From the IMG/VR virus record IMGVR_UViG_3300007513_000001, positions 229,410 through 293,409 of that record: a stretch of 64,000 bases of DNA; one strand, given 5' to 3'. Shown in pieces: positions 45,200 to 64,000 of this stretch (its first letter is position 1; the number at the start of each line of letters is the position of its first letter). Both the position numbers and the translations under genes were made by a program. The notes under the pieces are model-generated. The model saw nothing but the letters and a program-made list of their open reading frames with translations. It had not been told where the DNA came from and made no database searches.

Positions 45200-45277
45200 A
45201 GGCCCATAGCTCAATCAGGTCAGAGCATTTGTCTCATAAACAAAGGGTTCCGGGTTCGAGTCCCGGTGGGCCTACCA
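45200..45277 (+). tRNA. tRNA-CAT, probably Ile2 (TilS substrate) rather than Met
   Basis: Acceptor AGGCCCA/TGGGCCT, anticodon arm TTTGT-CTCATAA-ACAAA, T-arm CCGGG-TTCGAGT-CCCGG, encoded CCA; C4:G69 and C5:G68. Confidence 0.92.
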
Positions 45278-45290
45278 CTTTAAAAAGAGG

Positions 45291-46348: not shown

Positions 46349-46358
<10 letters not shown>
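45291..46358 (+). CDS. DUF4268-type PD-(D/E)xK endonuclease-like protein
   Basis: WKNEATDFTPW, RIDILA, IVIENQ, DHRHFHNIQHY; stop codon lies inside tRNA-Asn. Confidence 0.75.
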
Positions 46359-46424
<66 letters not shown>

Positions 46425-46441
46425 TCTTTCGAGGTATATAA

Positions 46442-48031: not shown

Positions 48032-48091
48032 ATTTTATACACTTTTGGTGTTGTGGGTATAGTTTCTTAATCTACGTTTAAGGAGATAAAA

Positions 48092-48391
48092 ATGCTAGAT
48101 AAAATTAAGTCACTTTTGACGAAATACAAGGTACACGTAAGCGTTGTTGGTGGGGCTTTAGTTATTGCTACTGTTTACGGCCAGTGCACTTTAGAGCCAA
48201 ACGTTGAAGCAGTTGAAGAAGCAGTTGAAGAAGCTGCCGATCAAGCAGCTAACTCAACCACGTCTAACGAAGACAAAAAGGTTGAAGCGGCAGCGGCAGA
48301 TGCAGCTATCATGACTGAAGACGCGACTAACGCATCTGAAAATGAAAGTGCTGATACCACTACAGAAGCTACAGAGACTAAAGAAGATTAA
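48092..48391 (+). CDS. small lipoprotein-like acidic protein
   Basis: Hydrophobic N-terminus ending YGQC; A/T/E-rich tail; SD AGGAG. Confidence 0.7.
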   Translation: MLDKIKSLLTKYKVHVSVVGGALVIATVYGQCTLEPNVEAVEEAVEEAADQAANSTTSNEDKKVEAAAADAAIMTEDATNASENESADTTTEATETKED

Positions 48392-48409
48392 AAATAATTA
48401 TGTTTTTTA

Positions 48410-48438
48410 TTGAACAACAGAGTTTTGAAGTTTAAAAT
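48410..48438 (+). promoter_or_regulatory. sigma70-type promoter upstream of the large ncRNA candidate
   Basis: TTGAAC-N17-TAAAAT. Confidence 0.5.
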
Positions 48439-48480
48439 AAAACATAATTTACTAAACGTTCTTTAACATTGCTAATAAAA

Positions 48481-49132
48481 GACCTTAGTTCTTGGGTCTA
48501 CAAACCTGGATGAGATTACCGATCTCCAGGCGCTAGCGAAAGCTGGTGATAGAGAAAACCTCGCTCAGGAAAAAGCTGTTCTTACGGACCTGCCCGCCTG
48601 ACTAAGAGAGGGGATGCGTAAAGGAGGGTGGTACCTCTGAAAATCATCCAGTGATTCGATGCATGGGTTCCCATACCACTGGGAAAATACTGCTGAGAGT
48701 ATCCGCGGACTTGTAGGTTCATCGTGGAAACGGGATAAGGGGACTAACCAAGAAAAAGTCTTGGGAAGAGAGGTTAATACCTTTTAGAATCTAACTGTCG
48801 GTGATAGAAGTCTCTCTGGCGGAATCGGAAACGAGACCGTCGTCCCGAAAGGGGTCGTATGGACATCCTCCCAAGGTTTGGAAATGCGACGCGCAACTAA
48901 GAGGTGAAGTGTACAGCTCACTCAAAGGCGCGCAGAATATCATAATACGACAGTAAGGCGTGCTGTTCCGTAGTCTTACGGCTAAGAACAGGGAGAAAGC
49001 TCGCGAACGGCGTTACTTGCCGGTGTGCTTACATCTAACCCAAAGGGGACAGGCTCAAAAGGCTTGATGATCACGAGCAGAGAGAATAGAAGTGCTAAAA
49101 CTCTCCCCCTTTTTAACAAGACCCGAGAGGGC
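48481..49132 (+). ncRNA. large highly structured ncRNA candidate (~650 nt; ROOL/GOLLD size class or new)
   Basis: No credible ORF, GC-richer than flanks, more than 12 visible helices, several GNRA-capped (CUAGC-GAAA-GCUGG, CGU-GGAA-ACG, UCG-GAAA-CGA, CCC-GAAA-GGG, CCC-GAGA-GGG); lies in the tRNA region. Confidence 0.75.
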
Positions 49133-49144
49133 AAAGAGAAAAAA

Positions 49145-49573
49145 ATGACAGTAGAAATCGGTAGCAAAGTAGTAGTTCATTATAAAGGAACATTAAACAA
49201 CGGTGAAGAATTCGACAGCTCATATTCAAGAAATGAGCCGCTAAGTTTTACCGTAGGAAACGGAGAAACAATCGCGGGTTTTGATTCTGCTGTTGTTGGG
49301 ATGTCTATTGGGGAAGTAAAAAATATTACCCTGAGCCCATCCGAAGGGTATGGGGACGTAAATCCAGAAGCGTTTCAAAAGATTTCAAAGAATCAGTTTC
49401 CGTCAGATTTTGAACCATCAGCTGGCACTTTAGTCGAGGGAATCAATACCCAAGGCCAAAAAGTTAGAGCCATCATTGCAGAAGTTTTTGACGAAGATTT
49501 AGTTCTTGATTTTAATCACCCGATGGCTGGAAAAGAGATGAATTTCGAAATTCAGCTAGTCAACTGCGAATAA
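49145..49573 (+). CDS. FKBP-type peptidyl-prolyl isomerase with insert-in-flap domain (SlyD/SlpA-like)
   Basis: VVVHYKGTL, FDSS, IAGFDSAVVGM, EGYG, LDFNHPMAGK; start moved to ATG 49145. Confidence 0.93.
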   Translation: MTVEIGSKVVVHYKGTLNNGEEFDSSYSRNEPLSFTVGNGETIAGFDSAVVGMSIGEVKNITLSPSEGYGDVNPEAFQKISKNQFPSDFEPSAGTLVEGINTQGQKVRAIIAEVFDEDLVLDFNHPMAGKEMNFEIQLVNCE

Positions 49574-49580
49574 ACAAACT

Positions 49581-49656
49581 GCGGGAGTAGCTCAATTGGT
49601 AGAGCTTCAGCCTTCCAAGCTGATTGTTGAGGGTTCGATTCCCTTCTCCCGCTCCA
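49581..49656 (+). tRNA. tRNA-Gly (TCC)
   Basis: GCGGGAG/CTCCCGC, TCAGC-CTTCCAA-GCTGA, U73, encoded CCA. Confidence 0.97.
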
Positions 49657-49666
49657 TGGAGGTAAA

Positions 49667-49804
49667 ATGGCTAGGGTAAAAATATCAGATTTAGTTCATC
49701 AACAAAAGATTCTTGAAGACAAAATTAAGAAGATACAAATTGTTCTTTGGTCTACTGTTTTGTTTGTTGCAGTTTTTGGATATAAAGTATTGTTTGCCGT
49801 TTAG
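49667..49804 (+). CDS. 45-aa single-TM protein (not in ORF track)
   Basis: ATG after GGAGG; MARVKISDL...IVLWSTVLFVAVFGYKVLFAV. Confidence 0.6.
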   Translation: MARVKISDLVHQQKILEDKIKKIQIVLWSTVLFVAVFGYKVLFAV

Positions 49805-49814
49805 GGGAGACTTA

Positions 49815-50045
49815 ATGAAGACTTTAGTTAAAAAAGGGTCGATAGCCTATCTTAGTCACACTGGTCATAAAGGATTCAGGTATCCATCAAAAGATTCAGA
49901 AAAACTTCTTTTTGATGTAGAGGCTGAGCGAGTTTCTTGGGTTGGCGGTGGAGAAAAATTGACTCCCGTCAAAATTCCAGAATCATCAATTTTAGCTTTG
50001 GGAGATTCTGAAAAATCTGTCGTAGTTTGGGTTCATAAAAATTGA
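49815..50045 (+). CDS. small hypothetical protein
   Basis: ATG after GGGGAG. Confidence 0.65.
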   Translation: MKTLVKKGSIAYLSHTGHKGFRYPSKDSEKLLFDVEAERVSWVGGGEKLTPVKIPESSILALGDSEKSVVVWVHKN

Positions 50046-50077
50046 ACATCTAGCTATTTTAGTTAGAATTAATTTAT

Positions 50078-50154
50078 GCGCCCGTAGCTCAGCTGGATAG
50101 AGCAACGGCCTTCTAAGCCGTGGGCCGCAGGTTCGAATCCTGCCGGGCGTGCCA
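50078..50154 (+). tRNA. tRNA-Arg (TCT)
   Basis: GCGCCCG/CGGGCGT, ACGGC-CTTCTAA-GCCGT, TTCGAAT, encoded CCA. Confidence 0.97.
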
Positions 50155-51623: not shown

Positions 51624-53498
51624 ATGGGTAAAGTTATTGGAATTGATTTGGGCACGACAAATTCGTGCGTGGCTGTAGTCGAGGGTACAAACCCTATAGT
51701 TATAGCTAATGAAGAAGGAAGCAGAACAACTCCTTCCGTTGTGAGCTATAATGATACCGGAAGACTAGTAGGAATAGCAGCTCGTAGACAAGCTATCGTT
51801 AACCCCGAATCTACCGTGTATTCTGTGAAGCGTTTTATGGGAATGAGATTTGACGAATCTAAAACAGAGGTCGAAAAAGTTCCTTACGAAATAGTTTCTG
51901 GAGATAGCGGAGAGTGCCGAATAAAAATTAAAGATAGCAAACTGTCTCCTTCTGAAATATCAGCGCAGATTTTAACTAAGCTAAAGAGGAGTGCTGAAAG
52001 ATATTTAGGCACGACTGTAGACGAAGTCGTTATTACAGTACCAGCTTATTTTAATGACTCACAGCGTCAAGCAACTAAAGATGCTGGAAAAATTGCTGGG
52101 TTAGAAGTTAAAAGGATCATTAACGAACCGACAGCTGCAGCTTTAGCTTACGGCATGGATAAAGCTGGCGAGCAAAAGGTTGCTGTTTTTGACTTGGGCG
52201 GTGGTACATTTGATATCTCAATTTTAGAAATATCAGATGGAGTTGTCGAAGTTTTGAGCACGAATGGAGATACTCACCTTGGGGGCGACGACGTAGATCA
52301 ACTTTTGATTGATTGGCTATTTAAAACTTTTGAGGCGGACACCGGAATAGATCTTTCTAAAGATAGCATGGTTATTCAAAGGCTTAGAGAAGCAGCTGAA
52401 AAAGCTAAAATAGAGCTCTCTACAGCGCAGCAAACTGAAATCAATCTTCCCTTCTTGACAGCTGACGCGACCGGTCCGAAACATCTAACTGCGAATTTGA
52501 CAAGATCAAAGTTTGAACAAATGATAGATTCTTTTGTTCAAAATACACTGGTTCCGGTTAAAAATGCGCTCGAAGATGCAAATATTGCCAAAGAAGAAAT
52601 TGATGAAGTGATTCTTGTTGGAGGGTCTACTAGAATTCCAGCTGTTAGAGATAGAGTTGAGAAGTTTTTCGGCAAAACTGCAAATAGTTCGGTTAATCCA
52701 GACGAAGTTGTTGCTCTTGGAGCAGCAGTGCAGGGAGGCGTATTTTCAGGAGACGTTAATGACGTGCTTCTTCTTGACGTTACCCCCTTATCTTTGGGCA
52801 TTGAAACCTTGGGAGGTGTAACAACATTTTTAATTAATCGAAACACCACGATTCCAACTTCTAAATCAGAAACCTTCAGCACGGCAACAGATAATCAGCC
52901 AGCGGTTGATATACACGTCTTGCAGGGAGAGAGAAAGTTTTCTAAAGACAACAGAACTCTTGGAAATTTTCAATTAGCTGGCATCCCTCCAGCTCCTCGA
53001 GGTTTACCACAAATCGAGGTAACTTTTGATATCGACGCGAATGGTATTTTGTCAGTTTCTGCAAAAGACAAAGCTACTGGAAAAGAGCAGAGTGTAAGAA
53101 TCGAAGGCCAATCTGGGCTTTCAGATAGTGATATATCTGATATGATTAAAAATGCCGAGGCTGCTGCAGAAGAAGACGAAAAGAAGTTTAAGGTTATAGA
53201 AGAAAGAAATAAGTTAGACACTCTTGTATACCAAGCTCAAAAAGCAATGAAAGAAAATCAAGACAACATGACGGAAGATTCTAAATTTTCTCTTGGGGAA
53301 TTTATTATCGCTGCCGAAAGTGCTTTAGACAGCGATAGTTTAGATGAGCTTAACCTAGCGTTTAATAATTTGCAGTCTAAGCTTCATGAAATAAGTTCAG
53401 AACTTTACCAATCGTCAACTACCGCTGAAGATTCTAGCGACACGAGCGATGATTCAGGTGATATTATAGACGCTGATTTTGAAGATGTTGACTCTTGA
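51624..53498 (+). CDS. dnaK: Hsp70 chaperone DnaK
   Basis: [69 protein letters not shown] tail. Confidence 0.98.
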
Positions 53499-54373: not shown

Positions 54374-54454
54374 TATTTTATTTTACTAAACATTATAGAT
54401 TTTCGGTATAAGCAGTTCATAAAATGATATTTAGTGATATCGAGTGGGAAAAAA

Positions 54455-55099
54455 ATGCAGCTAGTCAGAAAATATGTAAGAGCTCTTTTAATAGAGCAGC
54501 TAGAAGCGGAGCTTCAAACACCCTCTACGGGAGTCCCAAAAGGCGTTTGGACACTACTTCAGCCAGGTAGCCCAGAGTTTGAACAAGCTAGAATAGAACT
54601 AAATGATTTGATCACCATGGCTTATTCGAACATTGGCGGTCATTTAAAGATAACTAGTCCCGAAAGTTTGAACAGATATCAATTTTGGGTCGTCCAAGAT
54701 TTAGATGACGACGACCAAATAGATGTAGCCCTCTTTGGCAAGCCTGATATTGGTGGAAACAAACTTGGAGGAATAGGGCATGATGGATCTAGTGCTGCGA
54801 AGTCTGCATATAAAAACAAATCTGCAGAGCTTCGTTCTGGTGGAGAAGTAGCAGGAGTTGGAAATTGGTGGGGTGAAGTTAGTGGAAAAGCTGCATATGC
54901 AGTTTTGTCTCGTGGCGCACCCGCAATTACCGACGAAGCTCATGTCCGAACTCTTCTTGCTGGCGACCTTATCGTTTGGCACGGGATGCACCCAGATCCT
55001 GATGCTCCACCACTGTTTAAAGCTAACCCCGGATGGTACACTAAGACTTTTAGAGATGGTTCTGAACATACAAAAATAATAGCTGGGAGCCCGACGTGA
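54455..55099 (+). CDS. leader-bearing hypothetical protein
   Basis: MQLVRKYVRALLIEQ leader. Confidence 0.75.
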   Translation: MQLVRKYVRALLIEQLEAELQTPSTGVPKGVWTLLQPGSPEFEQARIELNDLITMAYSNIGGHLKITSPESLNRYQFWVVQDLDDDDQIDVALFGKPDIGGNKLGGIGHDGSSAAKSAYKNKSAELRSGGEVAGVGNWWGEVSGKAAYAVLSRGAPAITDEAHVRTLLAGDLIVWHGMHPDPDAPPLFKANPGWYTKTFRDGSEHTKIIAGSPT

Positions 55100-55344
55100 A
55101 AATCACAAAACTCCAACTCAGAAGAATAATTGCAGAAGCTATCGACTTAGATATCGAAAAGGGCGACGTTATTCTTACAGGAAGATTTAAAAATAAGAGA
55201 ACTATTGTAAAAGATATCGGAGTAGACGATTTAGGTCAACCCACTATTAATGGAATGAAAGTCCTGAATTTTAGAATTGAAAAACTTATGCCCAAAGATA
55301 AATGGAGCCAAAAATCTAAAGAAGCTCTTAAGGATAAAAAATGA
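55096..55344 (+). CDS. MKITK-leader small protein with SH3-like body
   Basis: MKITKLQLRRIIAEA; GDVILTGRFKN. Confidence 0.8.
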   Translation: MKITKLQLRRIIAEAIDLDIEKGDVILTGRFKNKRTIVKDIGVDDLGQPTINGMKVLNFRIEKLMPKDKWSQKSKEALKDKK

Positions 55345-55646
55345 GAATTACAAAACTGCAGCTTAAAAGAGTGATAAGAGAAGCTATAAACGAAAGCCAG
55401 TGGCAAGACAATATAGATGATTTTCTTTCTGACCGCGAAGCTAATCCTCACGATGGAGGCATGTACGGCGAAGATGAAGAAGACCGAAAATGGAGTGAAG
55501 CCGAATACGACCGCGGCTACCAGGACGGCTATGATGCTCTTCCACCCGCCGGCGACGCCTCAGCAGATTACGATGTGGGCTACGAAGACGGGAACAACGA
55601 TGGCAACGCTGAATCAGAGCGTGATTATGAAATGGGGTACAGATAA
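55341..55646 (+). CDS. MKITK-leader highly acidic protein with YxxGYxxG repeats
   Basis: MRITKLQLKRVIREA; YDRGYQDG, YDVGYEDG, YEMGY. Confidence 0.8.
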   Translation: MRITKLQLKRVIREAINESQWQDNIDDFLSDREANPHDGGMYGEDEEDRKWSEAEYDRGYQDGYDALPPAGDASADYDVGYEDGNNDGNAESERDYEMGYR

Positions 55647-55949
55647 ATGAAAATTACAAAGAGACAAATCAGAAGAATTATTAGAGAAGAGAAGCGAAAG
55701 GTCTTACGAGAGGGTATTACCCAAGAAGAGGCTTTGGCCGTCGCTATCCAAGACTACGTTATAGCGCTCCAAGACCAGATGGACTTCGACTCCGTCCAGG
55801 ACTTCCTACCAGATGTTATTGGTCAAGTCGAGGATTGGTTTGCAAATGAAGCTATCGCAGAAGAGTTCGCTGATGGCGAGAGCGGTGAATACGACCTTGA
55901 TCCGAATGATCAAGCATATGCTGCCGGTCGGCCATGGGAGCATAACTAA
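55647..55949 (+). CDS. MKITK-leader acidic protein
   Basis: MKITKRQIRRIIREE..VLREG. Confidence 0.8.
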   Translation: MKITKRQIRRIIREEKRKVLREGITQEEALAVAIQDYVIALQDQMDFDSVQDFLPDVIGQVEDWFANEAIAEEFADGESGEYDLDPNDQAYAAGRPWEHN

Positions 55950-55950
55950 A

Positions 55951-56352
55951 ATGAAAATCACGAAAAGACAGCTTAGAAGAATTATTAGAGAAGAGCTAGA
56001 TTACGGCGAGTTTCAGAGAGATCCAGAAGTTCAAGCGGCTCTACAAGCCGCAGGATTTAATCAAGACGGCAGCTTTGGAATGGAAGGCTATCCTGGACCA
56101 AGCGATTGGCAACTATACTCCCCGGAAAATATGGAGCAAGCCGAAAGGTGGATTGATGCTGCTATTGCAATGAATGATGCATTACGAAAAGCCGAAACTG
56201 CTTTAGACCGCGGCGAATATAGCTCAGCCCAAGATGCCTGGTATGATATAATTTATCCAGTGCAAAAAGAATATAGTGATACCGGGGCAGCCGATACAGA
56301 GGGCAGAGAGGTCGCCGGTGACTGGTTAGAACAAGCGGGATTTTCGTGGTAA
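55951..56352 (+). CDS. MKITK-leader acidic protein
   Basis: MKITKRQLRRIIREE; start moved from 55813. Confidence 0.8.
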   Translation: MKITKRQLRRIIREELDYGEFQRDPEVQAALQAAGFNQDGSFGMEGYPGPSDWQLYSPENMEQAERWIDAAIAMNDALRKAETALDRGEYSSAQDAWYDIIYPVQKEYSDTGAADTEGREVAGDWLEQAGFSW

Positions 56353-56353
56353 A

Positions 56354-56644
56354 ATGAAAATTACAAAAAGAAAACTCAGAAGAATTATCCGGGAAGAAAA
56401 AGAACTTCTTTTAAAAGAAGCAATTAAATTTCCGTGGGGCGAAACTGACCCAGAATATCCTGACGATAATGCTGTATTACCACCGACTAGAAAAATAGAA
56501 TTTAAGTGGGGGCCAGGTGGCTTGGAAATGGAAATGCGTATGAACGGAGAGAAAATTCTTGGTTTTACGCGGCAATCACAAGTCGACGAATTAATTGAAC
56601 AACTAGAGGGTCTACTTGCTGGACCAATGAGGACATCACCATGA
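56354..56644 (+). CDS. MKITK-leader protein
   Basis: MKITKRKLRRIIREE..LLKEA. Confidence 0.8.
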   Translation: MKITKRKLRRIIREEKELLLKEAIKFPWGETDPEYPDDNAVLPPTRKIEFKWGPGGLEMEMRMNGEKILGFTRQSQVDELIEQLEGLLAGPMRTSP

Positions 56645-56922
56645 AAATCACAAAAAGACAACTCAGAAGAATCATCAAAGAAGAAAGACGGCTCTTAAAA
56701 GAGCAGGGTGATCCTATCGCTGACCAGCTTCTTGGAGATTTCGTTACAGATTTAGCTAGTGGGCTAATGGATATGTATGATCCCCAAGACGCAAATCGAG
56801 TTGGATCTGAAGAAGATTTTTATGAAGCAGTAACGACAATAACAGTTGAGGTAGAAGACCTTGTACGCCAGCGATTAAATGATTTATGGTCTGGCGATTT
56901 AAAACTAGAGCTAATGAAATGA
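56641..56922 (+). CDS. MKITK-leader acidic protein
   Basis: MKITKRQLRRIIKEE..LLKEQ. Confidence 0.8.
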   Translation: MKITKRQLRRIIKEERRLLKEQGDPIADQLLGDFVTDLASGLMDMYDPQDANRVGSEEDFYEAVTTITVEVEDLVRQRLNDLWSGDLKLELMK

Positions 56923-57134
56923 AAATCACAAAAAGACAACTCCGGCGCCTGATTAAAGAAGTTCTACAAGAAGATAAGTCTGGGAAAGGAGCTTGCCCAG
57001 ATTCCGGGTGCATTAAGAAAAGTGGCGATGATTGGAGAATTATCAGTAACAAAACTGGTAAAATGTGGCCACAGAAATACAAAACGAGAAAAAGCGCAGA
57101 AAATGCGCTAGACGCTTATCATGCGAGTAGATGA
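56919..57134 (+). CDS. MKITK-leader basic protein
   Basis: MKITKRQLRRLIKEVLQE; ATG overlaps upstream TGA. Confidence 0.8.
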   Translation: MKITKRQLRRLIKEVLQEDKSGKGACPDSGCIKKSGDDWRIISNKTGKMWPQKYKTRKSAENALDAYHASR

Positions 57135-57166: not shown

Positions 57167-59938
57167 ATGTTATCAATTAATGGAATACCGATCAAGATCA
57201 AAGTAGCTCGAGACGACAAATCTCGAGCTCATGGTCTTATGGGGGTAAAGAGTATGCCGGAAAACGAGGGTATGCTTTTCGTTTTTTCAGAGTCGAAACC
57301 TAGATCTTTTTGGATGAAAGATACTCTGTTTCCGCTTTCTATTGCTTACATTGACGAAGACCATAAGATTATCAACATTGAAGACATGAAGCCACACGAT
57401 ACTTCTAGTGTTGTCTCTGCTTCACCCGCGATATGCGCATTAGAAATGAACCGAGGGTGGTTTAGAAACAACGGCATCCGACCGGGAGACGCTGTTGACG
57501 GAATCAAAAGGGTTTATAGTGAATCTATTTTAAGGAAATCTATTAGACTATTGTTGAGAGAATCATCTACACCCACACGAACTTCATTTGATATTCCTAT
57601 ACCTGCTGATTTAAAAGATATTCATTCACGAATTAAGTACGCGGGTCGAGAATTATTTTTAGTTGGTGGTGCTGTTCGAGATGCGCTTATGGGTAAAACC
57701 CCTAAAGATTATGACGTAGCAACAAATGCGAGTCCTGAAGCCGTTATAAAAATATTGCAAAAAGATCCAAGTCTTAGGTTAGATTTAACTGGTAAACAGT
57801 TTGGAGTAGTGAGAGTAAAAACTAGTGACGGTGGAGAATACGAAATAGCTACTTTTAGAGAAGACATAGGAAAAGGTAAGTCTACAAAGGTAAAATTTTC
57901 TACGATTGAAAACGATGTTAAAAGAAGAGATTTAACAATTAATGCGCTGTTCTACGATATGGATTCTAAAGAAATCGTAGATTATGTCGGCGGAATTGAA
58001 GACATTGAAAACGGAATAATCCGAGCAGTAGGAAACCCAACTCAAAGATTTGACGAAGATAGAATTAGAATTTTGAGAGCCGTCAGATTTGCTGGGAGGA
58101 TGGGATCAAATTTAGACCCGCAAACTAAGCAAGCTATTTTAGACGACAACAAACTAATAGATACGGAAACTGGTCAGCAGATACCAGCTGATAGAATCAC
58201 TGAAGAGTTTGTAAAAGGGATAAAGTCAGCGCAAGATCCCGTTGGGTTTTTAGCTACTATAAATGACCTCGGTCTTTTTGATCAAATTTTGCCAGGCTTA
58301 GAGCTGAATTTTAGTACTTCTGGAACAACTGACCACATAGCTCAATTGGCTGCGTTGTTAAATAATAATTCTACAGATTCTATATCTTCGACTTTAAAAA
58401 GAATGAGATATTCTAACGATGAACGGAATATCATTAATTTTTTAATTAGTTTTGGAAATATTAATCGAGACACTGCTCCAGCGCTTAAAAAAGATTTCAA
58501 GCGCTACAAGATACCAGAAAGTCATTTAATAGAATATGCAGCGGCTTCAGACAGCCTTTCACAAAATAAACTGGATTCGTTTCTGCAGTTTGCTTCTGAG
58601 CCACCAGCTGGAAACTCTAAAGAATTAATGGCTAAAGGAATCAAAGGGCGAGATCTTGGTGTTGCTCTTGCCGCAGCAGAGGGAGATGCTTTTGCGAAGT
58701 TGATTGGCGAGTCAGTAATCGTTAGGCTTTTGACGGAAGCCGCCAAAGGACCACAAGATCTGCCTGACGGAATATTTGTACAGATCAAGCCCGACGATTG
58801 GGGCGTTCGAGTCGCTTATGTAAACAAGCTCAATAATGTGCTCTCGATGGAAGCTGACATTCGGGGCGTAGTTATGGTAGAAAGGCTTTCAGAAGATGAT
58901 ACGGATTTAGGGCCGTGCGACGACGCATGGATGATCGGATCTTCAGAGGCAGCCCCTGGTTGGGGCCCAATGCTTTACGATGTTGCTATGGAATATGCTA
59001 CTATGAAAGGCGGCGGGCTTATGGCAGATCGAGGTTCAGTCTCTCCAAAGGCTCGTAATGTGTGGGACTATTACATGAATAATCGCGGTGACGTTACAGG
59101 AATCCAGATGGATGACCGCAAAAACACTCTCACACCAGAGGAAGAAGATAATTGTAGCCAAAAGGTTGCCGGTCTTGACAATCGGTCACAACAGGATAAG
59201 TCGAAGCTATCCCCAGCCGGCACTTACAAGACAGATTGGGTTGACTCTCCTTTAAGCAAACGCTGGACAAAACCACCCACCACCATCGAGGCTTTAAGAG
59301 CTGCAGGCAAACTCGTCTGGCATGAAGCGGGCGATCATCTTCCACTCAGAGATTTGGATGCAGAAGGTCCAATCTTGCACTTGGAAAATTTCGTGAAAGA
59401 AATATTAAAAGAAGAAACTTTTAGAATTCTAATACCGAGCCCTCCTTCTGAAAAAGAAAGGTTAAAAGAGCTTCCATACGTAGTTCAAAAAAATCAAAAT
59501 CCGAGCTTTAGCCCAGAGATTTTGAAGACGTTAGATAAGAGAGTTTCAAAGTTATTTAATTTTTTAATAGTGAGCGCTGGATATCCGGACGTTTTTGAAA
59601 GAATAAAAGAAACAAAAAACAGCATAAAACCAATTATCAAGTTTCACAAAAATTATTTTGATTGTCTCCGACCAGATGAATTAGCGGATTCTTATGGGCT
59701 AGATTTTCCTGTTAGCTATTTGGACAGTGCGCAGAGTCCGTCTTATCCTTCGGGTCATACAACCCAAGCGTTTTACTTAGCACATGTTTTGGCAAGTGAA
59801 TATCCAGAAATTTCAGAAGATTTTTATAATTTAGCTCAAATGGTGGCCGACTCTAGAATAGAACATGGGGTGCATTTACCTTCAGACAATGAAGCGGGAA
59901 AACTTCTTGCAAAAACTATATACGGGTGGGAAGTTTAA
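57167..59938 (+). CDS. cca: four-domain fusion: DUF192 + CCA-adding enzyme + GNAT-like domain + PAP2 phosphatase
   Basis: GLM..EGMLF..FWMKDT..PLSIAYI..ALE (DUF192); VGGAVRD..KDYDVAT, EIATFR, RRDLTINA, FDEDRIRILRAVRF (class II CCA); GWGPMLYD..SVSPKARNVW (GNAT-like); K..RP, PSGH, SRIEHGVHLPSD (PAP2). Confidence 0.88.
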   Translation: MLSINGIPIKIKVARDDKSRAHGLMGVKSMPENEGMLFVFSESKPRSFWMKDTLFPLSIAYIDEDHKIINIEDMKPHDTSSVVSASPAICALEMNRGWFRNNGIRPGDAVDGIKRVYSESILRKSIRLLLRESSTPTRTSFDIPIPADLKDIHSRIKYAGRELFLVGGAVRDALMGKTPKDYDVATNASPEAVIKILQKDPSLRLDLTGKQFGVVRVKTSDGGEYEIATFREDIGKGKSTKVKFSTIENDVKRRDLTINALFYDMDSKEIVDYVGGIEDIENGIIRAVGNPTQRFDEDRIRILRAVRFAGRMGSNLDPQTKQAILDDNKLIDTETGQQIPADRITEEFVKGIKSAQDPVGFLATINDLGLFDQILPGLELNFSTSGTTDHIAQLAALLNNNSTDSISSTLKRMRYSNDERNIINFLISFGNINRDTAPALKKDFKRYKIPESHLIEYAAASDSLSQNKLDSFLQFASEPPAGNSKELMAKGIKGRDLGVALAAAEGDAFAKLIGESVIVRLLTEAAKGPQDLPDGIFVQIKPDDWGVRVAYVNKLNNVLSMEADIRGVVMVERLSEDDTDLGPCDDAWMIGSSEAAPGWGPMLYDVAMEYATMKGGGLMADRGSVSPKARNVWDYYMNNRGDVTGIQMDDRKNTLTPEEEDNCSQKVAGLDNRSQQDKSKLSPAGTYKTDWVDSPLSKRWTKPPTTIEALRAAGKLVWHEAGDHLPLRDLDAEGPILHLENFVKEILKEETFRILIPSPPSEKERLKELPYVVQKNQNPSFSPEILKTLDKRVSKLFNFLIVSAGYPDVFERIKETKNSIKPIIKFHKNYFDCLRPDELADSYGLDFPVSYLDSAQSPSYPSGHTTQAFYLAHVLASEYPEISEDFYNLAQMVADSRIEHGVHLPSDNEAGKLLAKTIYGWEV

Positions 59939-59939
59939 G

Positions 59940-62414
59940 ATGACTGTGTTACGTGATCACATAAGAGCGCTGCTTGCGGAAGAAACAAAAGCATCCCGTG
60001 CAGTTCCGGAACTGGGCCTCTGGTTACCTAAAAACTTTAACGATCTCATAGAAAAGAAATACCCAGCCTATGCAATCCCAGATGAAGAGTGGGACGAAGG
60101 GTCTATTTCTTGGTGGATGCATGCAGAGTCGATCGAGGACGCGTGGCAGAAGAGAAATCAAGAAATTTCTGGCGACAAAACAATGGCCGTAGCAAAGACT
60201 GCATCCGGTGTTGGTGGTGGCATGACCGGTGTGGGTATCAGCGGCCTCCTCTACGCTGGTGGCCTCATCGTCGACGCTCTTGGCGGCGGCGGTATGGCAT
60301 CGCTTGCTTTAAAACTGCTTGGAGCCAAGGGCATTTTTCTTTCGATCGGCCATGAAGCCCTTAAAAAAGGTGGGTTTGATACCAAGCTAAGGCGAGAATT
60401 TCAGAAAGAAATTAGGTGGGATGAAAATCTTCTAAAAGGTATAAAAGAATCTGAGGCAGAGGCAGTCGAAAATGCTTACATGGAGTATTTTTGGGATATG
60501 ATTAAAAATAAGCCTCACGCGCACTTTGGGGTGGAGTTCGAAGACATAAACGATTTTTACCTGAGGACATCAGAAAGTGATATGCTACAGCCGACTGGAA
60601 CGAGGAAAGTTCGTGTGCCATCTCAGGACGAAAAAGATCTAGCTAAGCTTATAGCCACAAACCCTTCTGCTGGTGCTTCAAATAGGTTAAGGGGTCGTGA
60701 CTCGAGAGAAGCCCAAGCAGGAATGAGACAATTGTCGCAGAATGAACTGCGGAAATATATTCGTTCCCTACTAAGTGAATCCACCCAATACGACGATCAC
60801 TTCAAGCCGCTCATGGATTCTGGTTATGACGGTATCAAGCAAGCAATAGAATTAGCAGATAGTCTCGGTATGTCGCCTCGAGAATTACCGTGGAATGATG
60901 ATACGTTAAACGCTTATTTGTTTTATGCTCCAGGTGAAGATACACTTGAAAAGCTGACCAAAATTGGCTGGACTACCGAAGAATGGGTAGAACAGGGCCG
61001 AAGAGCTTTTGAAGACCGTGAGAGAGAATTAGGCTTGCGGGAATCAGCTGATTATGACGATGATTATTCATCTTCAATGGAGGCCATGCTTGCAATGCTG
61101 GTCGTTGATCAAGCTCAGGATAATGGAGCCGAACAGGCATTGATGATGTTTGAACCAATGGCATTGAGTGATGATCCAGAATATCAATTAGATCTAGATT
61201 TGTTAGCAGCAGAAATTTCTCAGAGATTGCAGCCCCATACAGAAAAATACCAGAAATATGATGGCGTGGACAAGTTCGGTGTTCTGCTTGTGTGGCAATC
61301 TACCGTAGATGAGATAATCAAATTTGTAACTGGAGATGGCATCAACCGAAGCTTTCGGCCTTCTTGGAAATCTTTCGAAAGAGAGGAAGATGTATCAGAA
61401 ATGCTGGGGCCAGTGTTAAGGCAAACAGTGACTGCGTGGAAAAAGAAAGAGCAAGGCAAGCCTGCAATGGCAGACCACGAGGAAGAGTGGGTTGTTCGCG
61501 AGTGTGTAAGAAGAATATTGACAGAGCAGATTAATTCAGTTTTAGACAAGATCGTTAAGCTTGTTGAGACAGGTCATGGAAATCAAGCTTTCGAAATCAT
61601 GGTTATGATGCCAGAAGAATTAGACACGGCCATGGTGATCACTACACTTCGAAAAGAATTAGCTAATTTACGCGCCATAACACGATCACCAGAGCCACAC
61701 CAGTGGGCTTACTCTAGATATAGAAAAAAGCTTCCTGATCCAGAGTGGGATAAGTTTGTTAAGTTTGCCCGTGGCTTTTCTGATTTTATCGGTTACCAAG
61801 GAAGTATGCTCGATCCGAATAATCATAACCCTCAACATCGGGCGCGCCCGCGCGATCCACTTGCCAAAACACATGACAGGTGGCCTTCAGCCGAAGATAT
61901 GATACAGATGCTACAGCAAAAAATTGGCGGTGAGACTATTAAAGAAGCAGCACGCCCGAACTATGTAACTGGCCATGGAATATTTGATGATCGGAGCCCA
62001 ACTGAAAATGAAAAGAAATTACTTGATGTGTTTGTTGGAAGTGGCGCCCAGGCTTTGGAGTTAGCTGAATTAACTGGCCACGATGAGCTAGCATCTTGGA
62101 TGCACAAGATAATAGATCCCATCCGTGAGAGAATTAAAACAATTGAAGATACAGTGGCGCTTATACAGTCTGATGAAATTACAGAGCGATGGAAGATAGA
62201 AGATATTTCGATAAAACTTGAAAATGAGGCTGAAGAAATACTTCGTGGCTACTATCCGTCAAGCAAGCTACACGACAGCTGGGAAGACAGTGTATTCGAA
62301 ATGGCGGATTATATTTGGTACCACGGTGTAGATTACGATAGCTACAACGTCGCCTCAGAAACCAAGTCAAAACAAGACTTAGACAAGATAAAGATGTGGG
62401 CAGGTGTCGCATGA
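59940..62414 (+). CDS. multi-module polyprotein-like ORF of leader-separated helical modules
   Basis: MTVLRDHIRALLAEE leader; internal LRKYIRSLLSES, LGLRES, VRECVRRILTEQ, TIKEA; start moved from 59865. Confidence 0.8.
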   Translation: MTVLRDHIRALLAEETKASRAVPELGLWLPKNFNDLIEKKYPAYAIPDEEWDEGSISWWMHAESIEDAWQKRNQEISGDKTMAVAKTASGVGGGMTGVGISGLLYAGGLIVDALGGGGMASLALKLLGAKGIFLSIGHEALKKGGFDTKLRREFQKEIRWDENLLKGIKESEAEAVENAYMEYFWDMIKNKPHAHFGVEFEDINDFYLRTSESDMLQPTGTRKVRVPSQDEKDLAKLIATNPSAGASNRLRGRDSREAQAGMRQLSQNELRKYIRSLLSESTQYDDHFKPLMDSGYDGIKQAIELADSLGMSPRELPWNDDTLNAYLFYAPGEDTLEKLTKIGWTTEEWVEQGRRAFEDRERELGLRESADYDDDYSSSMEAMLAMLVVDQAQDNGAEQALMMFEPMALSDDPEYQLDLDLLAAEISQRLQPHTEKYQKYDGVDKFGVLLVWQSTVDEIIKFVTGDGINRSFRPSWKSFEREEDVSEMLGPVLRQTVTAWKKKEQGKPAMADHEEEWVVRECVRRILTEQINSVLDKIVKLVETGHGNQAFEIMVMMPEELDTAMVITTLRKELANLRAITRSPEPHQWAYSRYRKKLPDPEWDKFVKFARGFSDFIGYQGSMLDPNNHNPQHRARPRDPLAKTHDRWPSAEDMIQMLQQKIGGETIKEAARPNYVTGHGIFDDRSPTENEKKLLDVFVGSGAQALELAELTGHDELASWMHKIIDPIRERIKTIEDTVALIQSDEITERWKIEDISIKLENEAEEILRGYYPSSKLHDSWEDSVFEMADYIWYHGVDYDSYNVASETKSKQDLDKIKMWAGVA
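60783..60893 (+). repeat. 37-codon module duplicated at 63456..63566
   Basis: TQYDDHFKPLMDSGYDGIKQAIELADSLGMSPRELPW vs TEYDSHFKPLMDSGFDGIKQAMELADSLGITSQELPW (29/37 identical). Confidence 0.9.
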
Positions 62415-62935
62415 ACCCACTCCGTGAATACATAAGGGAAATGCTTACTGAAGCCAGCACAGAGGAGAAGACCGCTTCGATCAACGATATGCTCAATGCT
62501 GAAAAAGAGGTAGCCAAGCTTACCAATATATTTTGGGGCAGCGGCGCCCAGGGGCTCCAGCTGGCTGAGATGGTGGGAGCGACTGATAAAGATGGGATCC
62601 CGCTTTCTGAGATTTTTGATGAAATTGTTAATGATGTCGTTTGGCTAATTGAAGAGGTGGAAAAGTTCGGAGAAGAATTTAAGAAAACACCACCCAAAAC
62701 CCATTGGGCCGCTACAAACAGTGACAAGCACATGGAGACGATTCAACGGCAAATCATAGATGAGATCGCAATGACAGGATTATATCCCGGTATCTCAGAC
62801 GAACTACACGATCATCTTGTACATGTTGCTACGAAAGCTGTTTGGAGCATTGTGCCTCACCCATGGGGTAAAGTGGATACCGAGCAAGGTGCAAGATCAT
62901 TGGCTTGGCTCAAGAAATGGGCAGGTGTCGCGTGA
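62411..62935 (+). CDS. leader-bearing helical protein, paralog of the last module of 59940..62414
   Basis: MNPLREYIREMLTEA; FWGSGAQGLQLAE; KKWAGVA end shared. Confidence 0.8.
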   Translation: MNPLREYIREMLTEASTEEKTASINDMLNAEKEVAKLTNIFWGSGAQGLQLAEMVGATDKDGIPLSEIFDEIVNDVVWLIEEVEKFGEEFKKTPPKTHWAATNSDKHMETIQRQIIDEIAMTGLYPGISDELHDHLVHVATKAVWSIVPHPWGKVDTEQGARSLAWLKKWAGVA

Positions 62936-63417
62936 ACCTGCTCCGTGAATACATAAGAGTTCTAGTCGAGAAAAGTGAAGGTGAAGACCCTGTGCGCGAA
63001 GACAGAATGAAAGTATCCCAGATGTTCTGGAACATCGGCGCAGGTATGGGAATTCGGCTGGCAGAAATGACTCCAGGCTTGGAAGATCTTGCTGCTGAGT
63101 TTGAAGAGTTTCGGATTCTCGTGGAGGAGTTTATTGATCTTAGTGAGAGATTTATGGCCCAACCTCCGAAAGACAGCGCTGTGCAATGGACCATCCAGAT
63201 ACGCACAATTAAAAAGAATATTCAAACAAGAGCAGCAGAACTGCACTGGCACCGGCCGGGTCACGCAGCCGATAAAGAACTCGATTCTGCGCACCGCCGC
63301 TGGGTGCAGATGTTTTTAGAGGCACTCCGGTGGGCACACTGGACCCATACTCAAGGCGCACACGCACATTCAGACCAAGAAGAATATGAAGCTCTAAAAG
63401 ACTGGATAGTTGTATGA
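62932..63417 (+). CDS. leader-bearing helical protein, same paralog family
   Basis: GTG start overlapping TGA; MNLLREYIRVLVE; MFWNIGAGMGIRLAE. Confidence 0.8.
   Translation: MNLLREYIRVLVEKSEGEDPVREDRMKVSQMFWNIGAGMGIRLAEMTPGLEDLAAEFEEFRILVEEFIDLSERFMAQPPKDSAVQWTIQIRTIKKNIQTRAAELHWHRPGHAADKELDSAHRRWVQMFLEALRWAHWTHTQGAHAHSDQEEYEALKDWIVV
62933..62969 (+). repeat. 37-bp exact direct repeat at gene starts (second copy 63415..63451)
   Basis: tgaacctgctccgtgaatacataagagttctagtcga; partial third copy at 62412. Confidence 0.95.
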
Positions 63418-64000
63418 ACCTGCTCCGTGAATACATAAGAGTTCTAGTCGAAGCCACCGAATACGACTCTCACTTCAAACCACTCATGGACTCAGGCTTC
63501 GATGGCATCAAGCAAGCAATGGAACTAGCCGATAGTCTGGGCATAACCTCTCAAGAATTGCCTTGGGACATGGGTTCGATTGATGAGTACGCATGGGAGA
63601 TGCGGGATGACGTACCATGGCCAGAAGTTTTAGAACCCACCGGTTGGACTGAAAAAGATTATCGAAACGCTTTTGATGCTAAATGGAAGAGCATCCCCGG
63701 TGCACAACCTCATTGGGACTTGACCGAGCAGAAGGTTCTAGCTCAAGGGATGTGTTTTCCGTTCGCAATTGAGAAAGCTGAAGAGTGGTTTGAAGACCAT
63801 TTTACGAAGGGTGGCCCTGGTCGCAAGCCAAAGAGGCATCCGGCTCTGAACAACATGGACAAGTTCAAGGTTGTGCATGGGAAGGTAACTGACAAGTGGG
63901 AGAAGCCACCGAAACCTATCGTTCATGCATGGGTGGAAATGGGTGACTTGGTCTTTGATGACCAAACGAAACACACGAAACCCGACGGCATTCCGAAAGA
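63414..64000 (+). CDS. leader-bearing two-module protein ending in a transglutaminase/papain-like domain (runs off right edge)
   Basis: Not in ORF track; MNLLREYIRVLVEA, duplicated module, DLTEQ, then GMCFPFA...VVHG...HAWVE..D..FD. Confidence 0.7.
   Translation, partial: MNLLREYIRVLVEATEYDSHFKPLMDSGFDGIKQAMELADSLGITSQELPWDMGSIDEYAWEMRDDVPWPEVLEPTGWTEKDYRNAFDAKWKSIPGAQPHWDLTEQKVLAQGMCFPFAIEKAEEWFEDHFTKGGPGRKPKRHPALNNMDKFKVVHGKVTDKWEKPPKPIVHAWVEMGDLVFDDQTKHTKPDGIPK

What the first reader, a model, noticed from the sequence alone, without database searches (positions are those of the whole stretch)
57167..59938. DUF192-CCA-GNAT-like-PAP2 polyprotein with the leader motif at every domain boundary
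Seen: ILRKSIRLLLRES (~57525-57565), LIGESVIVRLLTEA (~58700-58742) and LENFVKEILKEE (~59380-59416) fall exactly between four recognisable domains. The CCA domain has DxD and RRD motifs, lacks the poly(A)-polymerase signature and an HD domain, and its flexible loop looks a few residues short. All four tRNAs here already encode CCA. Inference: a proteolytically processed, possibly packaged tRNA-rescue kit (PAP2 removes 3'-phosphate, CCA rebuilds the end) against tRNA-cleaving defences; gives a functional hint for DUF192.
Basis: partly seen in the sequence, partly recalled or inferred. Interest (0 to 1): 0.8.

Follow-up and report, generated by a model that had tools for sequence, protein, structure and literature searches.

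The report
Leader-tagged enzyme polyprotein of a marine jumbo phage
A marine giant phage fuses four enzymes into one protein, separated by copies of a short address-and-cut-here helix that also heads about 50 of its other genes; this suggests the phage loads ready-made enzymes, including a tRNA-end repair enzyme, into its capsid and injects them, which has not been shown directly.

Summary
Window 57167-59938 (+) is one intact 923-aa frame: DUF192, a class II CCA/poly(A)-type nucleotidyltransferase (NTase), a virus-specific GNAT-like domain (MID) and a soluble PAP2 phosphatase. An 11-14-aa amphipathic helix ending in [L/I]-x-E sits at all three junctions. Copy 1 is strong, copy 3 moderate. Copy 2 is degenerate, but it lies where most homologues carry a strong copy.

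The same motif is the N-terminal leader of about 50 genes, roughly 9.5% of this 293-kb marine phage genome. It is conserved at the amino-acid level only. In relatives the NTase, MID and PAP2 modules are separate leader-tagged genes, or are fused in other orders with the leader kept at each junction.

The phage has a T4-like head module with an apparently active gp21-type (S77) prohead protease, whose known cut sites are I/L-x-E. My best reading is that the leader is this lineage's capsid-targeting sequence plus cleavage site, so the polyprotein is packaged, cut and injected.

The "tRNA-rescue kit" idea is plausible but untested. NTase specificity is unresolved, the PAP2-NTase fusion is unique to this protein, and fusion partners are promiscuous. 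I class it as a new variant of known kinds (T4 CTS/internal proteins, polyvalent proteins).

The parts
57167..59938 (+). 923-aa polyprotein ORF (stop included)
   Evidence: Single open frame. The junctions are bridged by error-free contigs from independent runs. The identical protein occurs on 4 contigs.
57191..57496 (+). DUF192 domain (aa 9-110). It has no N-terminal leader.
   Evidence: Pfam PF02643, 106 bits against a cut-off of 27. PDB 3pjy and 3m7a match at 1e-16. The nearest relatives are standalone 137-aa proteins that carry the leader at their C-terminus.
57530..57562 (+). Leader copy 1, aa 122-132 LRKSIRLLLRE. Cut predicted after E132.
   Evidence: PWM 20.1 bits, the best 11-mer in the protein. 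No minus-strand control reaches 14 bits.
57563..58699 (+). Class II nucleotidyltransferase module (aa 133-511; CCA-adding/poly(A) polymerase type)
   Evidence: Pfam PolyA_pol and PolyA_pol_RNAbd. PHROG tRNA nucleotidyltransferase, 2e-57. GGAVRD/DYD, RRD and EDRIR motifs are present and the A-B loop is 3-4 aa short. NCBIfam PcnB scores 192 bits and CCA 175 bits, both below their cut-offs.
58706..58738 (+). Leader copy 2, aa 514-524 GESVIVRLLTE (degenerate). Cut predicted after E524.
   Evidence: PWM -0.6 bits. It is positionally equivalent to the strong junction leader found in 61 of 112 homologues. The LLTE|AAKG junction matches the leader-tagged paralogue.
58739..59317 (+). MID domain (aa 525-717): a virus-specific family with a remote GNAT-like fold
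   Evidence: 1692 cluster representatives at E<=1e-3, mostly ~200-aa proteins in which the match begins at about residue 15, after a leader. No Pfam match. AF2 pLDDT 89.8. All of the top 50 VIA-align hits are GNAT folds, Z 5-7. Atlas neighbours agree.
59381..59413 (+). Leader copy 3, aa 739-749 LENFVKEILKE. Cut predicted after E749.
   Evidence: PWM 11.1 bits, second best in the protein. It aligns column for column with the N-terminal leaders of standalone PAP2 homologues. It is modelled as a lower-confidence helix ahead of the high-confidence PAP2 body.
59414..59935 (+). Soluble PAP2 phosphatase module (aa 750-923)
   Evidence: Pfam PAP2, 43.9 bits against a cut-off of 27.2. The K..RP, PSGH and SR..H..D residues are invariant in 41 homologues. 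AF2 pLDDT 91.8. Nearest structures are class A acid phosphatases 7f17, PhoC and PhoN.
54434..57134 (+). Upstream tandem array of leader-tagged genes: one with a type B leader (54434-55099), then seven small genes with a type A leader (MKITKRQLRRIIRE)
   Evidence: ORFs; PWM 27-40 bits. Codons vary synonymously and the upstream DNA is not conserved.
59940..62414 (+). Downstream neighbour: a second polyprotein (~824 aa) with an N-terminal leader and two internal leader copies
   Evidence: PWM 29.5, 28.1 and 19.0 bits at window 59949, 60747 and 61494. One of its modules is fused behind MID in relative P0054.
62396..64000 (+). Three more type B leader-tagged genes. The last runs off the window and contig end and continues at the genome start.
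   Evidence: PWM 33.6, 19.8 and 18.9 bits. The contig ends overlap by about 38 bp.

Best explanation
The ORF is a genuine fusion of four 'cargo' modules. Each is flanked by this phage lineage's portable leader, an 11-14-residue amphipathic helix ending in [L/I]-x-E.

The leader most likely works like the T4 capsid-targeting sequence. During head assembly it docks the protein onto the scaffolding core, and the T4-type (S77) prohead protease then cuts after the Glu. On this reading the 923-aa precursor is packaged once and released inside the capsid as up to four proteins: DUF192 with the helix still on its C-terminus (aa 1-132), the NTase (133-524), the GNAT-like MID (525-749) and the acid-phosphatase-like PAP2 (750-923). 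These would be injected with the DNA and act before any phage gene is expressed.

Shown here:
- the fusion is real;
- the motif is placed at the junctions and is statistically significant there;
- the modules occur on their own in relatives;
- the S77 protease is present and looks active;
- the [L/I]-x-E junction is conserved.

Inferred:
- targeting to the prohead, cleavage and injection;
- the biochemical roles. Restoring tRNA 3' ends is the most likely role for the NTase, because the phage's tRNA genes in the window (the ones checked) already encode CCA.
For: 1. The motif acts as a protein-level tag.
   - A regex for it finds 51 hits in six frames, all on the + strand.
   - About 54 frames carry about 60 sites of 12 bits or more, covering 9.5% of the genome.
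   - Codons vary synonymously and upstream DNA is unconserved.
2. The modules are portable.
   - In L002 the NTase and MID are separate leader-tagged genes.
   - Among the 149 best MID-family proteins (of 1692 clusters), 68 carry a leader of 10 bits or more within their first 12 residues.
   - Standalone PAP2 homologues carry the leader, and it aligns with internal copy 3.
3. The junction rule holds in homologues. In 117 NTase homologues there are 158 motif hits. None lies inside the NTase core. In 61 of 112 a hit starts 4-9 aa after the core, and in 46 of 99 a hit ends 0-6 aa before it.
4. The cut-site signature is conserved. At the mature start of MID, P1 is Glu in 86 of 100 and P3 is Leu/Ile in 92 of 100. 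This holds across three leader flavours and for both N-terminal and internal copies. It matches T4 gp21 sites such as ITE-6 and LTE-619 in Alt (PMC5694885).
5. The machinery is present.
   - S77 protease at 85 bits, with His/Ser/Asp aligned to T4 gp21 structure 5jbl.
   - Two gp23-like capsid genes.
   - The MCP has ...VLRE|A in its N-terminal part.
   - A core protein beside the protease starts with a type-A-like leader; only 2 of 162,370 control positions score as high.
   - Five of five large leader-bearing IMG/VR records have S77.
6. There is precedent. T4 internal proteins are diverse and share only a CTS (PMC3012670). The packaged ADP-ribosyltransferase Alt is cut by gp21, and an ART-like leader-tagged gene by sequence motifs (no family match) sits at G000 1340-1954.
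7. In the AF2 models the leader helices have lower confidence than the domain bodies.
Against: - There is no proteomic or biochemical evidence. The phage is uncultured and no GenBank phage carries MID.
- The leader arrays lie far from the head module (about 48-58 kb and 283-293/0-4 kb, against 170-181 kb). The T4 late-promoter octamer is not enriched, so late expression is unproven.
- Standalone DUF192 relatives carry the motif at their C-terminus. That does not fit a simple N-terminal propeptide model.
- Copy 2 is degenerate and might not be cut.
- About 50 cargo species is far more than in T4.
- A basic amphipathic helix could serve other roles, such as membrane, nucleic-acid or oligomer contacts.
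- The co-occurrence with S77 is phylogenetically non-independent.
Confidence: 0.6

Rival explanations
1. The helix is a capsid-targeting or docking element, but the internal copies are not cut. The protein would then be packaged and injected as one intact multi-enzyme 'polyvalent' protein.
For: Multidomain injected effector proteins are well documented (PMC5512222). Copy 2 is degenerate. DUF192 relatives keep the motif as a C-terminal tail, so the helix can persist on a mature protein.
Against: Glu at P1 and Leu/Ile at P3 are conserved at internal junctions as strongly as at N-terminal ones. Internal copies in homologues score 20-30 bits. T4 gp21 does cut internal and C-terminal sites (LTE-619 of Alt; PMC5694885).
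Confidence: 0.15
2. The leader has nothing to do with the virion. It would be a shared tag for proteins made inside the infected cell, for example an oligomerisation, membrane, nucleoid or RNA-binding helix, or a degron or regulatory handle. The polyprotein would then be simply a multi-domain cytoplasmic enzyme.
For: The helix is basic and amphipathic. The arrays are not adjacent to the head genes, and no T4-type late promoter signal was found. Many cargo domains are ordinary cytoplasmic enzymes.
Against: This does not explain the invariant [L/I]-x-E end placed exactly at the start of the conserved mature domain across three leader flavours. It does not explain the leader-like N-terminus of a head-core protein next to the protease. 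It does not explain the parallel with T4 internal proteins and Alt.
Confidence: 0.12
3. The precursor is processed at the leader copies by a different protease, for example a co-delivered zincin-like peptidase as proposed for polyvalent proteins, or a host protease acting after injection.
For: Relatives encode a leader-tagged HExxH (SprT-like) module. Iyer et al. propose metallopeptidase-mediated processing of polyvalent proteins (PMC5512222).
Against: That HExxH module has no BLAST match in this phage's own genome. The site signature fits S77 specificity, and S77 is present in all five large leader-bearing relatives tested.
Confidence: 0.08
4. The internal copies are functionless relics. Neighbouring leader-tagged genes in a tight tandem array fused through loss of a stop codon, and the former N-terminal leaders are decaying.
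For: The genes in the arrays abut or overlap. Copy 2 is degenerate and copy 3 is weaker than typical N-terminal leaders.
Against: Junction leaders are retained at high score in dozens of divergent homologues with different partners, which indicates selection. All three copies keep L-x-E.
Confidence: 0.05

Closest known systems
T4 capsid-targeting sequence (CTS) with internal proteins IPI-III and Alt, processed by prohead protease gp21
   Same: A short (10-20 aa) shared N-terminal propeptide heads otherwise unrelated proteins and ends in an I/L-x-E cut site. An S77 protease and gp23-like capsid genes are present. The cargo includes enzymes and an ADP-ribosyltransferase-like protein. The tagged genes sit in tandem, fast-evolving arrays (PMC3012670, PMC5694885).
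   Different: The leader sequence differs and comes in at least three flavours. There are about 50 tagged genes (9.5% of the genome) rather than a handful. The leader recurs inside fused multi-enzyme precursors and sometimes at C-termini. Packaging and cleavage are not demonstrated here.
Polyvalent proteins of phages and conjugative elements (Iyer, Burroughs, Anand, de Souza, Aravind 2017)
   Same: Several unrelated effector enzyme domains sit in one polypeptide that is thought to be delivered with the DNA. Domains shuffle between relatives. GNAT, ART, HD, RelA/SpoT-type and zincin modules occur in the family (PMC5512222).
   Different: That paper does not mention CCA-type NTase, DUF192, PAP2 or prohead-protease processing. 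Here a defined repeated linker motif marks every junction. The proposed processing enzyme is the head protease, and the zincin module is absent from this genome.
Ejection/inner-body proteins of phiKZ-like giant phages (phiKZ, SPN3US) processed by an S80 prohead protease
   Same: Many head-internal proteins carry propeptides that are removed at x-x-E motifs. Paralogues have conserved N-termini. Some substrates have multiple cut sites (PMC5694885, PMC10052503).
   Different: Those propeptides are long (over 100 aa), the motif is A/S/G-x-E, and the protease family differs. No short portable tag or enzyme polyproteins are described there.
Multifunctional bacterial CCA-adding/repair enzymes and 'Swiss Army Knife' RNA-repair proteins
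   Same: An NTase of the CCA type is combined with phosphoesterase domains. Relatives of this NTase are fused to HD, HD_4, NUDIX and HAD_SAK_1, the HAD family named for RNA-repair proteins. CCA-adding enzymes are noted in jumbo phages as tRNA-end repair factors (PMC7824862).
   Different: Here the phosphatase is a PAP2/class A acid phosphatase type, which I do not know to have been linked to RNA repair (my own knowledge, not searched). The domains are separated by putative cut sites rather than forming one enzyme. Activity and specificity are untested.

Membership tests
T4-type CTS / internal-protein system | Genome encodes a gp21-type (Peptidase_S77) prohead protease with its catalytic triad | tested here: met
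   PF03420, 84.7 bits against a cut-off of 27. His/Ser/Asp align with T4 gp21 structure 5jbl.
T4-type CTS / internal-protein system | A short propeptide shared by otherwise unrelated proteins | tested here: met
   About 50 ORFs carry it. The cargo proteins are unrelated to one another.
T4-type CTS / internal-protein system | The propeptide ends in an I/L-x-E cleavage motif directly before the conserved mature protein | tested here: met
   P1 is Glu in 86 of 100 and P3 is Leu/Ile in 92 of 100 at the MID mature start. T4 sites are given in PMC5694885.
T4-type CTS / internal-protein system | Proteins are present in the virion and trimmed by the protease | not testable with these tools
   The phage is uncultured and no proteomic data are available.
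T4-type CTS / internal-protein system | Sequence similarity to the T4 CTS itself | not tested
From memory the sequences differ apart from the I/L-x-E end.
Polyvalent proteins (Iyer et al. 2017) | Two or more unrelated effector domains in one polypeptide, with the domains shuffled among relatives | tested here: met
Polyvalent proteins (Iyer et al. 2017) | An associated zincin-like metallopeptidase for processing | tested here: not met
   The HExxH module found in relatives has no match in this genome. Only that one family was tested.
Polyvalent proteins (Iyer et al. 2017) | Presence of catalogued LPD/polyvalent-specific domains | tested here: inconclusive
   An AFDB cluster named 'Large polyvalent protein associated domain' matches MID at 2e-13. 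No Pfam LPD model hits any of the 86 family members.
Class II CCA-adding enzyme | Motif A (GGxVRD, DxD), motif B (RRD) and motif D (EDxxR) | tested here: met
   Seen in the alignments to 3aqm and 6ibp. The same motifs occur in bacterial poly(A) polymerase (PMC2532741), so they do not discriminate between the two.
Class II CCA-adding enzyme | Scores above the curated cut-off of a CCA equivalog model | tested here: not met
   NF009814 scores 174.7 bits against 290. The PcnB subfamily scores 191.9 bits against 305.65.
Class II CCA-adding enzyme | Flexible loop of normal length between motifs A and B (needed for A addition) | tested here: inconclusive
   The loop is 3-4 residues shorter than in 6ibp and 3aqm. 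Loop sequence varies strongly among enzymes (PMC2910056).
Class II CCA-adding enzyme | Adds C, C and A to tRNA 3' ends | not testable with these tools
   This needs an enzyme assay.
PAP2 / class A acid phosphatase | Kx6RP, PSGH and SRx5Hx3D catalytic motifs | tested here: met
   K, R, P, PSGH, R, H and D are invariant in 41 homologues.
PAP2 / class A acid phosphatase | Pfam PAP2 above the gathering score, and a soluble class A fold | tested here: met
   43.9 bits against 27.2. Foldseek hits 7f17, PhoC and PhoN at E 7e-7 to 1e-3, TM about 0.6.
GNAT acetyltransferases | GNAT fold | tested here: inconclusive
   All of the top 50 VIA-align hits are GNAT, but at Z 5-7, below the tool's confidence line. 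Foldseek against PDB is not significant. Atlas neighbours with GNAT families have TM 0.4-0.6.
GNAT acetyltransferases | A match to GNAT sequence models | tested here: not met
   No Pfam hit for the domain or for any of its 86 relatives.
DUF192 (PF02643) | Pfam model above the gathering score | tested here: met
   106.2 bits against 27. PDB 3pjy and 3m7a match.

The most novel reading that the evidence does not exclude
An uncultured clade of marine T4-like jumbo phages devotes about a tenth of its genome to an addressable cargo system. A short helix acts as both capsid address and protease cut site. It lets any enzyme, singly or strung together as combinatorial polyproteins, be loaded into the head and injected. 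In this phage the load would include a pre-made tRNA 3'-end repair set (NTase plus phosphatase) that pre-empts tRNA-targeting host defences before any phage gene is transcribed.
Probability: 0.3. Interest if true: 0.85.

Novelty: new variant of a known kind. Interest (0 to 1): 0.72.

Why it matters
If the leader is a capsid address plus cut site, three things follow.

1. It gives a sequence rule for reading the injected proteome of a whole group of uncultured ocean phages directly from their genomes. Here that means about 50 proteins, most of unknown function.
2. It would be the first case of tRNA-end repair enzymes delivered ready-made with the DNA. That would move the tRNA arms race between phages and bacterial defences to the first seconds of infection.
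3. It would offer a natural, modular packaging tag and polyprotein design for loading foreign enzymes into large capsids.

It also assigns a context, injected effector, to a large virus-only GNAT-like family (1692 clusters) and to phage DUF192 and PAP2 proteins.

Tried and rejected
- **HMMER on the 11-aa motif.** Local domain calls were erratic, so I replaced it with a full-length position weight matrix using BLOSUM pseudocounts.
- **Full-length alignments for a whole-protein AF2 model (A2, A3, A4).** MAFFT scattered or misplaced the domain fragments. I dropped the whole-protein model and modelled MID and leader-plus-PAP2 separately. The DUF192/NTase linker was therefore not modelled.
- **T4 late promoter TATAAATA.** It occurs 8 times per strand against about 24 expected, so it gives no information on timing.
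- **GenBank phage collection.** No nucleotide match to the locus, only NTase hits below 40% identity, and no MID match. No cultured relative or virion proteome is available.
- **Literature search for the motif strings.** Only false hits.
- **Pfam on other leader-tagged cargo.** Mostly empty.
- **Considered and rejected: the conserved leader as a DNA-level repeat, promoter or mobile cassette.** Codons vary synonymously and upstream DNA differs.
- **Considered and rejected: the fusion as an assembly chimera.** Independent contigs bridge each junction.
- **Considered and rejected: internal translation starts.** No start codon precedes the internal copies.
Full report
**What the window is.** The window is the last 64 kb of a 293,409-bp IMG/VR virus record. 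The record's ends overlap by about 38 bp, so it is a complete circularly assembled genome. GC content is 39%. The sequence is held by marine and seawater metagenomes from several studies. Its head genes are distantly T4-like: a Peptidase_S77 (gp21-type) prohead protease at G000 171474-172085 and two gp23-like capsid genes. The nearest cultured capsid relatives reach only 37-47% identity: Microcystis phage Mel-JY01, Flavobacterium 'immuto' phages and Rhodothermus RM378. No GenBank phage matches the locus at the DNA level.

**The ORF and its domains.** Window 57167..59938 (+) is one open frame of 923 aa. Contigs from independent runs cover each of the three junctions without a single difference or indel, and the identical protein occurs on four contigs. 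The fusion is therefore real.

- Pfam finds DUF192 (aa 9-110), the PolyA_pol head domain (163-286) with its RNA-binding domain (316-378), and PAP2 (825-915).
- PHROGs calls the second domain a tRNA nucleotidyltransferase.
- The stretch aa 525-717 ('MID') matches no Pfam or NCBIfam model.

**The leader motif.** A simple pattern, x[RK]xx[LIVM][RK]x[LIVMA][LIVM]xE, gives 51 hits in the six-frame translation of the genome, all on the + strand and mostly at ORF starts. Two flavours dominate.

- MKITKRQLRRIIRE (type A) heads small proteins, in arrays at genome 47.6-58 kb and window 55.1-57.1 kb.
- MNLLREYIRELLSE (type B) heads larger, enzyme-like proteins at window 54.4 kb and 59.9-64 kb, running on into genome 0-4.3 kb.

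Relatives show a third flavour, MKLLFENWRKFINE. At 12 bits or more there are about 60 sites in about 54 frames, covering 9.5% of the genome. Conservation is at the amino-acid level: codons vary synonymously and the DNA upstream of the start codons is not conserved.

**The three internal copies.** I trained a position matrix only on N-terminal type B leaders from this genome and one relative. The two best 11-mers in the whole polyprotein are:

- aa 122-132 LRKSIRLLLRE at 20.1 bits. None of 162,370 minus-strand control positions reaches 14 bits.
- aa 739-749 LENFVKEILKE at 11.1 bits. Four controls reach 10 bits.

Homology rescues it. Among 117 NTase homologues there are 158 motif hits of 10 bits or more. 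None lies inside the ~375-aa NTase core. In 61 of 112 a hit begins 4-9 residues after the core, and in 50 of those the offset is exactly that of copy 2. In 46 of 99 a hit ends 0-6 residues before the core. Copy 2 also keeps the L-x-E|AAKG junction of the leader-tagged MID paralogue at G000 2504. All three copies fall between the domain limits given by Pfam, PDB matches and homologue alignments.

**Are the domains separate leader-tagged genes in relatives? Yes.**

- In the closest IMG/VR relative (L002) the NTase (71% identical) is its own gene beginning MKIKKSQLRRIIRE, and MID is a separate gene beginning MNLLREYIRVLLTE.
- The MID family is very large: 1692 cluster representatives at E<=1e-3. 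The best hits are mostly ~200-aa proteins in which the match starts at about residue 15, right after a leader.
- PAP2 homologues are mostly ~187-aa standalone proteins with the leader. In the alignment their N-terminal leaders line up with internal copy 3 of the polyprotein.
- DUF192 is more varied. Some relatives have an N-terminal leader. The two nearest are 136-137-aa standalone proteins, one ending ...ESILRKSIRALLE plus six residues, so the motif sits at their C-terminus. Others are fused behind the NTase.
- Homologous NTases are joined, always through leader copies, to a shifting set of partners: MID, DUF192, HD, HD_4, HAD_SAK_1, NUDIX, Fic, SET, a HipA-like kinase and an HExxH module.
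- The gene downstream in the window (59940-62414) is itself a three-leader polyprotein.

**What the leader most likely is.** The invariant part of the motif is its end. At the start of the conserved mature MID sequence, P1 is Glu in 86 of 100 proteins and P3 is Leu or Ile in 92 of 100. This holds across all three flavours and for both N-terminal (66) and internal (34) copies. That is the known specificity of T4 gp21, for example ITE-6 and LTE-619 in Alt (PMC5694885).

In T4, internal proteins and Alt reach the prohead core through a 10-20-aa capsid-targeting sequence, which the protease then removes. The internal proteins are otherwise unrelated to each other (PMC3012670, PMC5694885). Several observations fit the same scheme here.

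- The S77 protease has His, Ser and Asp at the positions of the T4 catalytic triad.
- The major capsid protein has ...VLRE|A in its N-terminal part.
- A small protein two genes downstream of the protease starts MAKISKSMLKGIVKE. This scores 10.7 bits on the type A matrix, and only 2 of 162,370 control positions score as high.
- Five of five large IMG/VR records that carry the leader also carry S77, although these records are related to each other.
- In the two AF2 models the leader segments form helices of lower confidence (57-79) than the domain bodies (96 or more).

I therefore read the leader as this lineage's targeting sequence plus cut site, and the ORF as a precursor that is packaged and cut into up to four proteins for injection. 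None of this is demonstrated experimentally.

**The enzymes.**

*NTase.* It has GGAVRD/DYD, RRD and EDRIR, so it is probably active. Bacterial poly(A) polymerases share these motifs (PMC2532741). The PcnB model scores 192 bits and the CCA model 175 bits, both below their cut-offs. The best PDB match is E. coli PAP I, narrowly ahead of a CCA-adding enzyme. The loop between motifs A and B is 3-4 residues shorter than in either.

*PAP2.* All catalytic residues are present. It models as a soluble enzyme whose nearest structures are non-specific class A acid phosphatases. That is compatible with removing a 3'-phosphate, and equally with acting on nucleotides or lipid phosphates.

*MID.* It is a confident model (pLDDT 89.8). 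It resembles GNAT folds only remotely: Z 5-7, but all of the top 50 hits are GNAT, and the Atlas search agrees. Its conserved G-W-G-P loop sits in front of a helix, where GNATs bind acetyl-CoA.

*DUF192.* It remains of unknown function.

**The 'tRNA-rescue kit' idea.** For it: relatives fuse the NTase to HD, HD_4, NUDIX and HAD_SAK_1, the HAD family named for RNA-repair proteins. Jumbo-phage CCA enzymes are generally viewed as tRNA-end repair factors (PMC7824862).

Against using the fusion as functional evidence: among 117 NTase homologues, MID follows in 10, DUF192 in 4 and PAP2 in none. Partners also include Fic, SET and kinase domains. Fusion therefore seems to reflect a shared route of delivery more than a shared pathway. 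I put the kit reading at roughly one in four to one in three.

**Comparison with what is known.** The closest systems are:

- the T4 CTS/internal-protein/Alt system;
- the propeptide-bearing ejection proteins of phiKZ-like phages;
- the 'polyvalent proteins' of Iyer et al. (PMC5512222).

The polyvalent-protein paper mentions neither CCA-type enzymes, DUF192, PAP2 nor prohead-protease processing. The zincin peptidase it invokes for processing is absent from this genome. The motif strings were not found in the searchable literature. What is new here is the scale (about 50 tagged genes), the use of the tag as a repeated linker in combinatorial enzyme polyproteins, and the nature of the cargo. I class it as a new variant of a known kind.

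**Limits.**

- There is no cultured relative and no proteome.
- Expression timing is unknown; the T4 late-promoter octamer is not enriched.
- The whole-protein structure could not be modelled, because the alignments misplaced the fragments.
- The C-terminal placement of the motif on some DUF192 proteins does not fit a simple N-terminal propeptide model.

Noticed in passing
window 59940-62414 (+): The next gene is also a polyprotein of about 824 aa. It has an N-terminal leader and two strong internal copies (at 60747 and 61494), and no Pfam domains. One of its modules is fused behind MID in a relative (P0054).
   Followed up: partly
window 55096-57134 (+); also G000 47.6-58.1 kb (L008): There are tandem arrays of small (60-250 aa) proteins, some acidic (for example window 55341-55646), all starting MKITKRQLRRIIRE. 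Some frames hold two leader units in a row. They resemble the polymorphic internal-protein arrays of T4-like phages.
   Followed up: partly
window 63390-64000 (+), continuing at G000 1-999 (L007): A leader-tagged ORF runs off the contig end and continues across the circular junction into a frame with a second leader (VREYVRALLKE). This is another likely two-module precursor, split by the linearisation of the record.
   Followed up: no
L007 1340-1954 (G000, outside the window): A leader-tagged protein shows an R / S-x-S / E-x-E pattern typical of mono-ADP-ribosyltransferases. It is reminiscent of T4 Alt, which is packaged and injected. It has no Pfam hit.
   Followed up: partly
window 51624-53498, 25373-26992, 46442-48031 (+): The phage encodes a full-length Hsp70/DnaK (832 bits), a Cpn60/GroEL-type chaperonin and an asparagine synthase. 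The Hsp70 gene lies just upstream of the leader-gene array.
   Followed up: no
window 45200-50154 (+); G000 7607-9859: There are four tRNA genes in the window (Met, Asn, Gly, Arg), all with encoded CCA, and four more near the genome start (Leu, Lys, Thr, Pro).
   Followed up: partly
window 31800-33818 and 13218-14258 (+): Two larger ORFs without Pfam matches carry internal leader-like motifs (IRKMIRRIIRE at 33408, 18 bits; LRRYLKGLLKE at 13650, 15 bits). They may be further processed or packaged proteins.
   Followed up: no
window 58726-59211, run X4 record 9: In one metagenome, a more abundant related phage carries a diverged MID homologue in a different gene context. This is direct evidence of module shuffling within one sample.
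   Followed up: no
P0270 (metagenomic protein, 200 aa): This protein is a 99%-identical copy of the PAP2 module, but its N-terminus is different and not leader-like. It may be a variant or frameshifted form of the polyprotein on a short contig.
   Followed up: no
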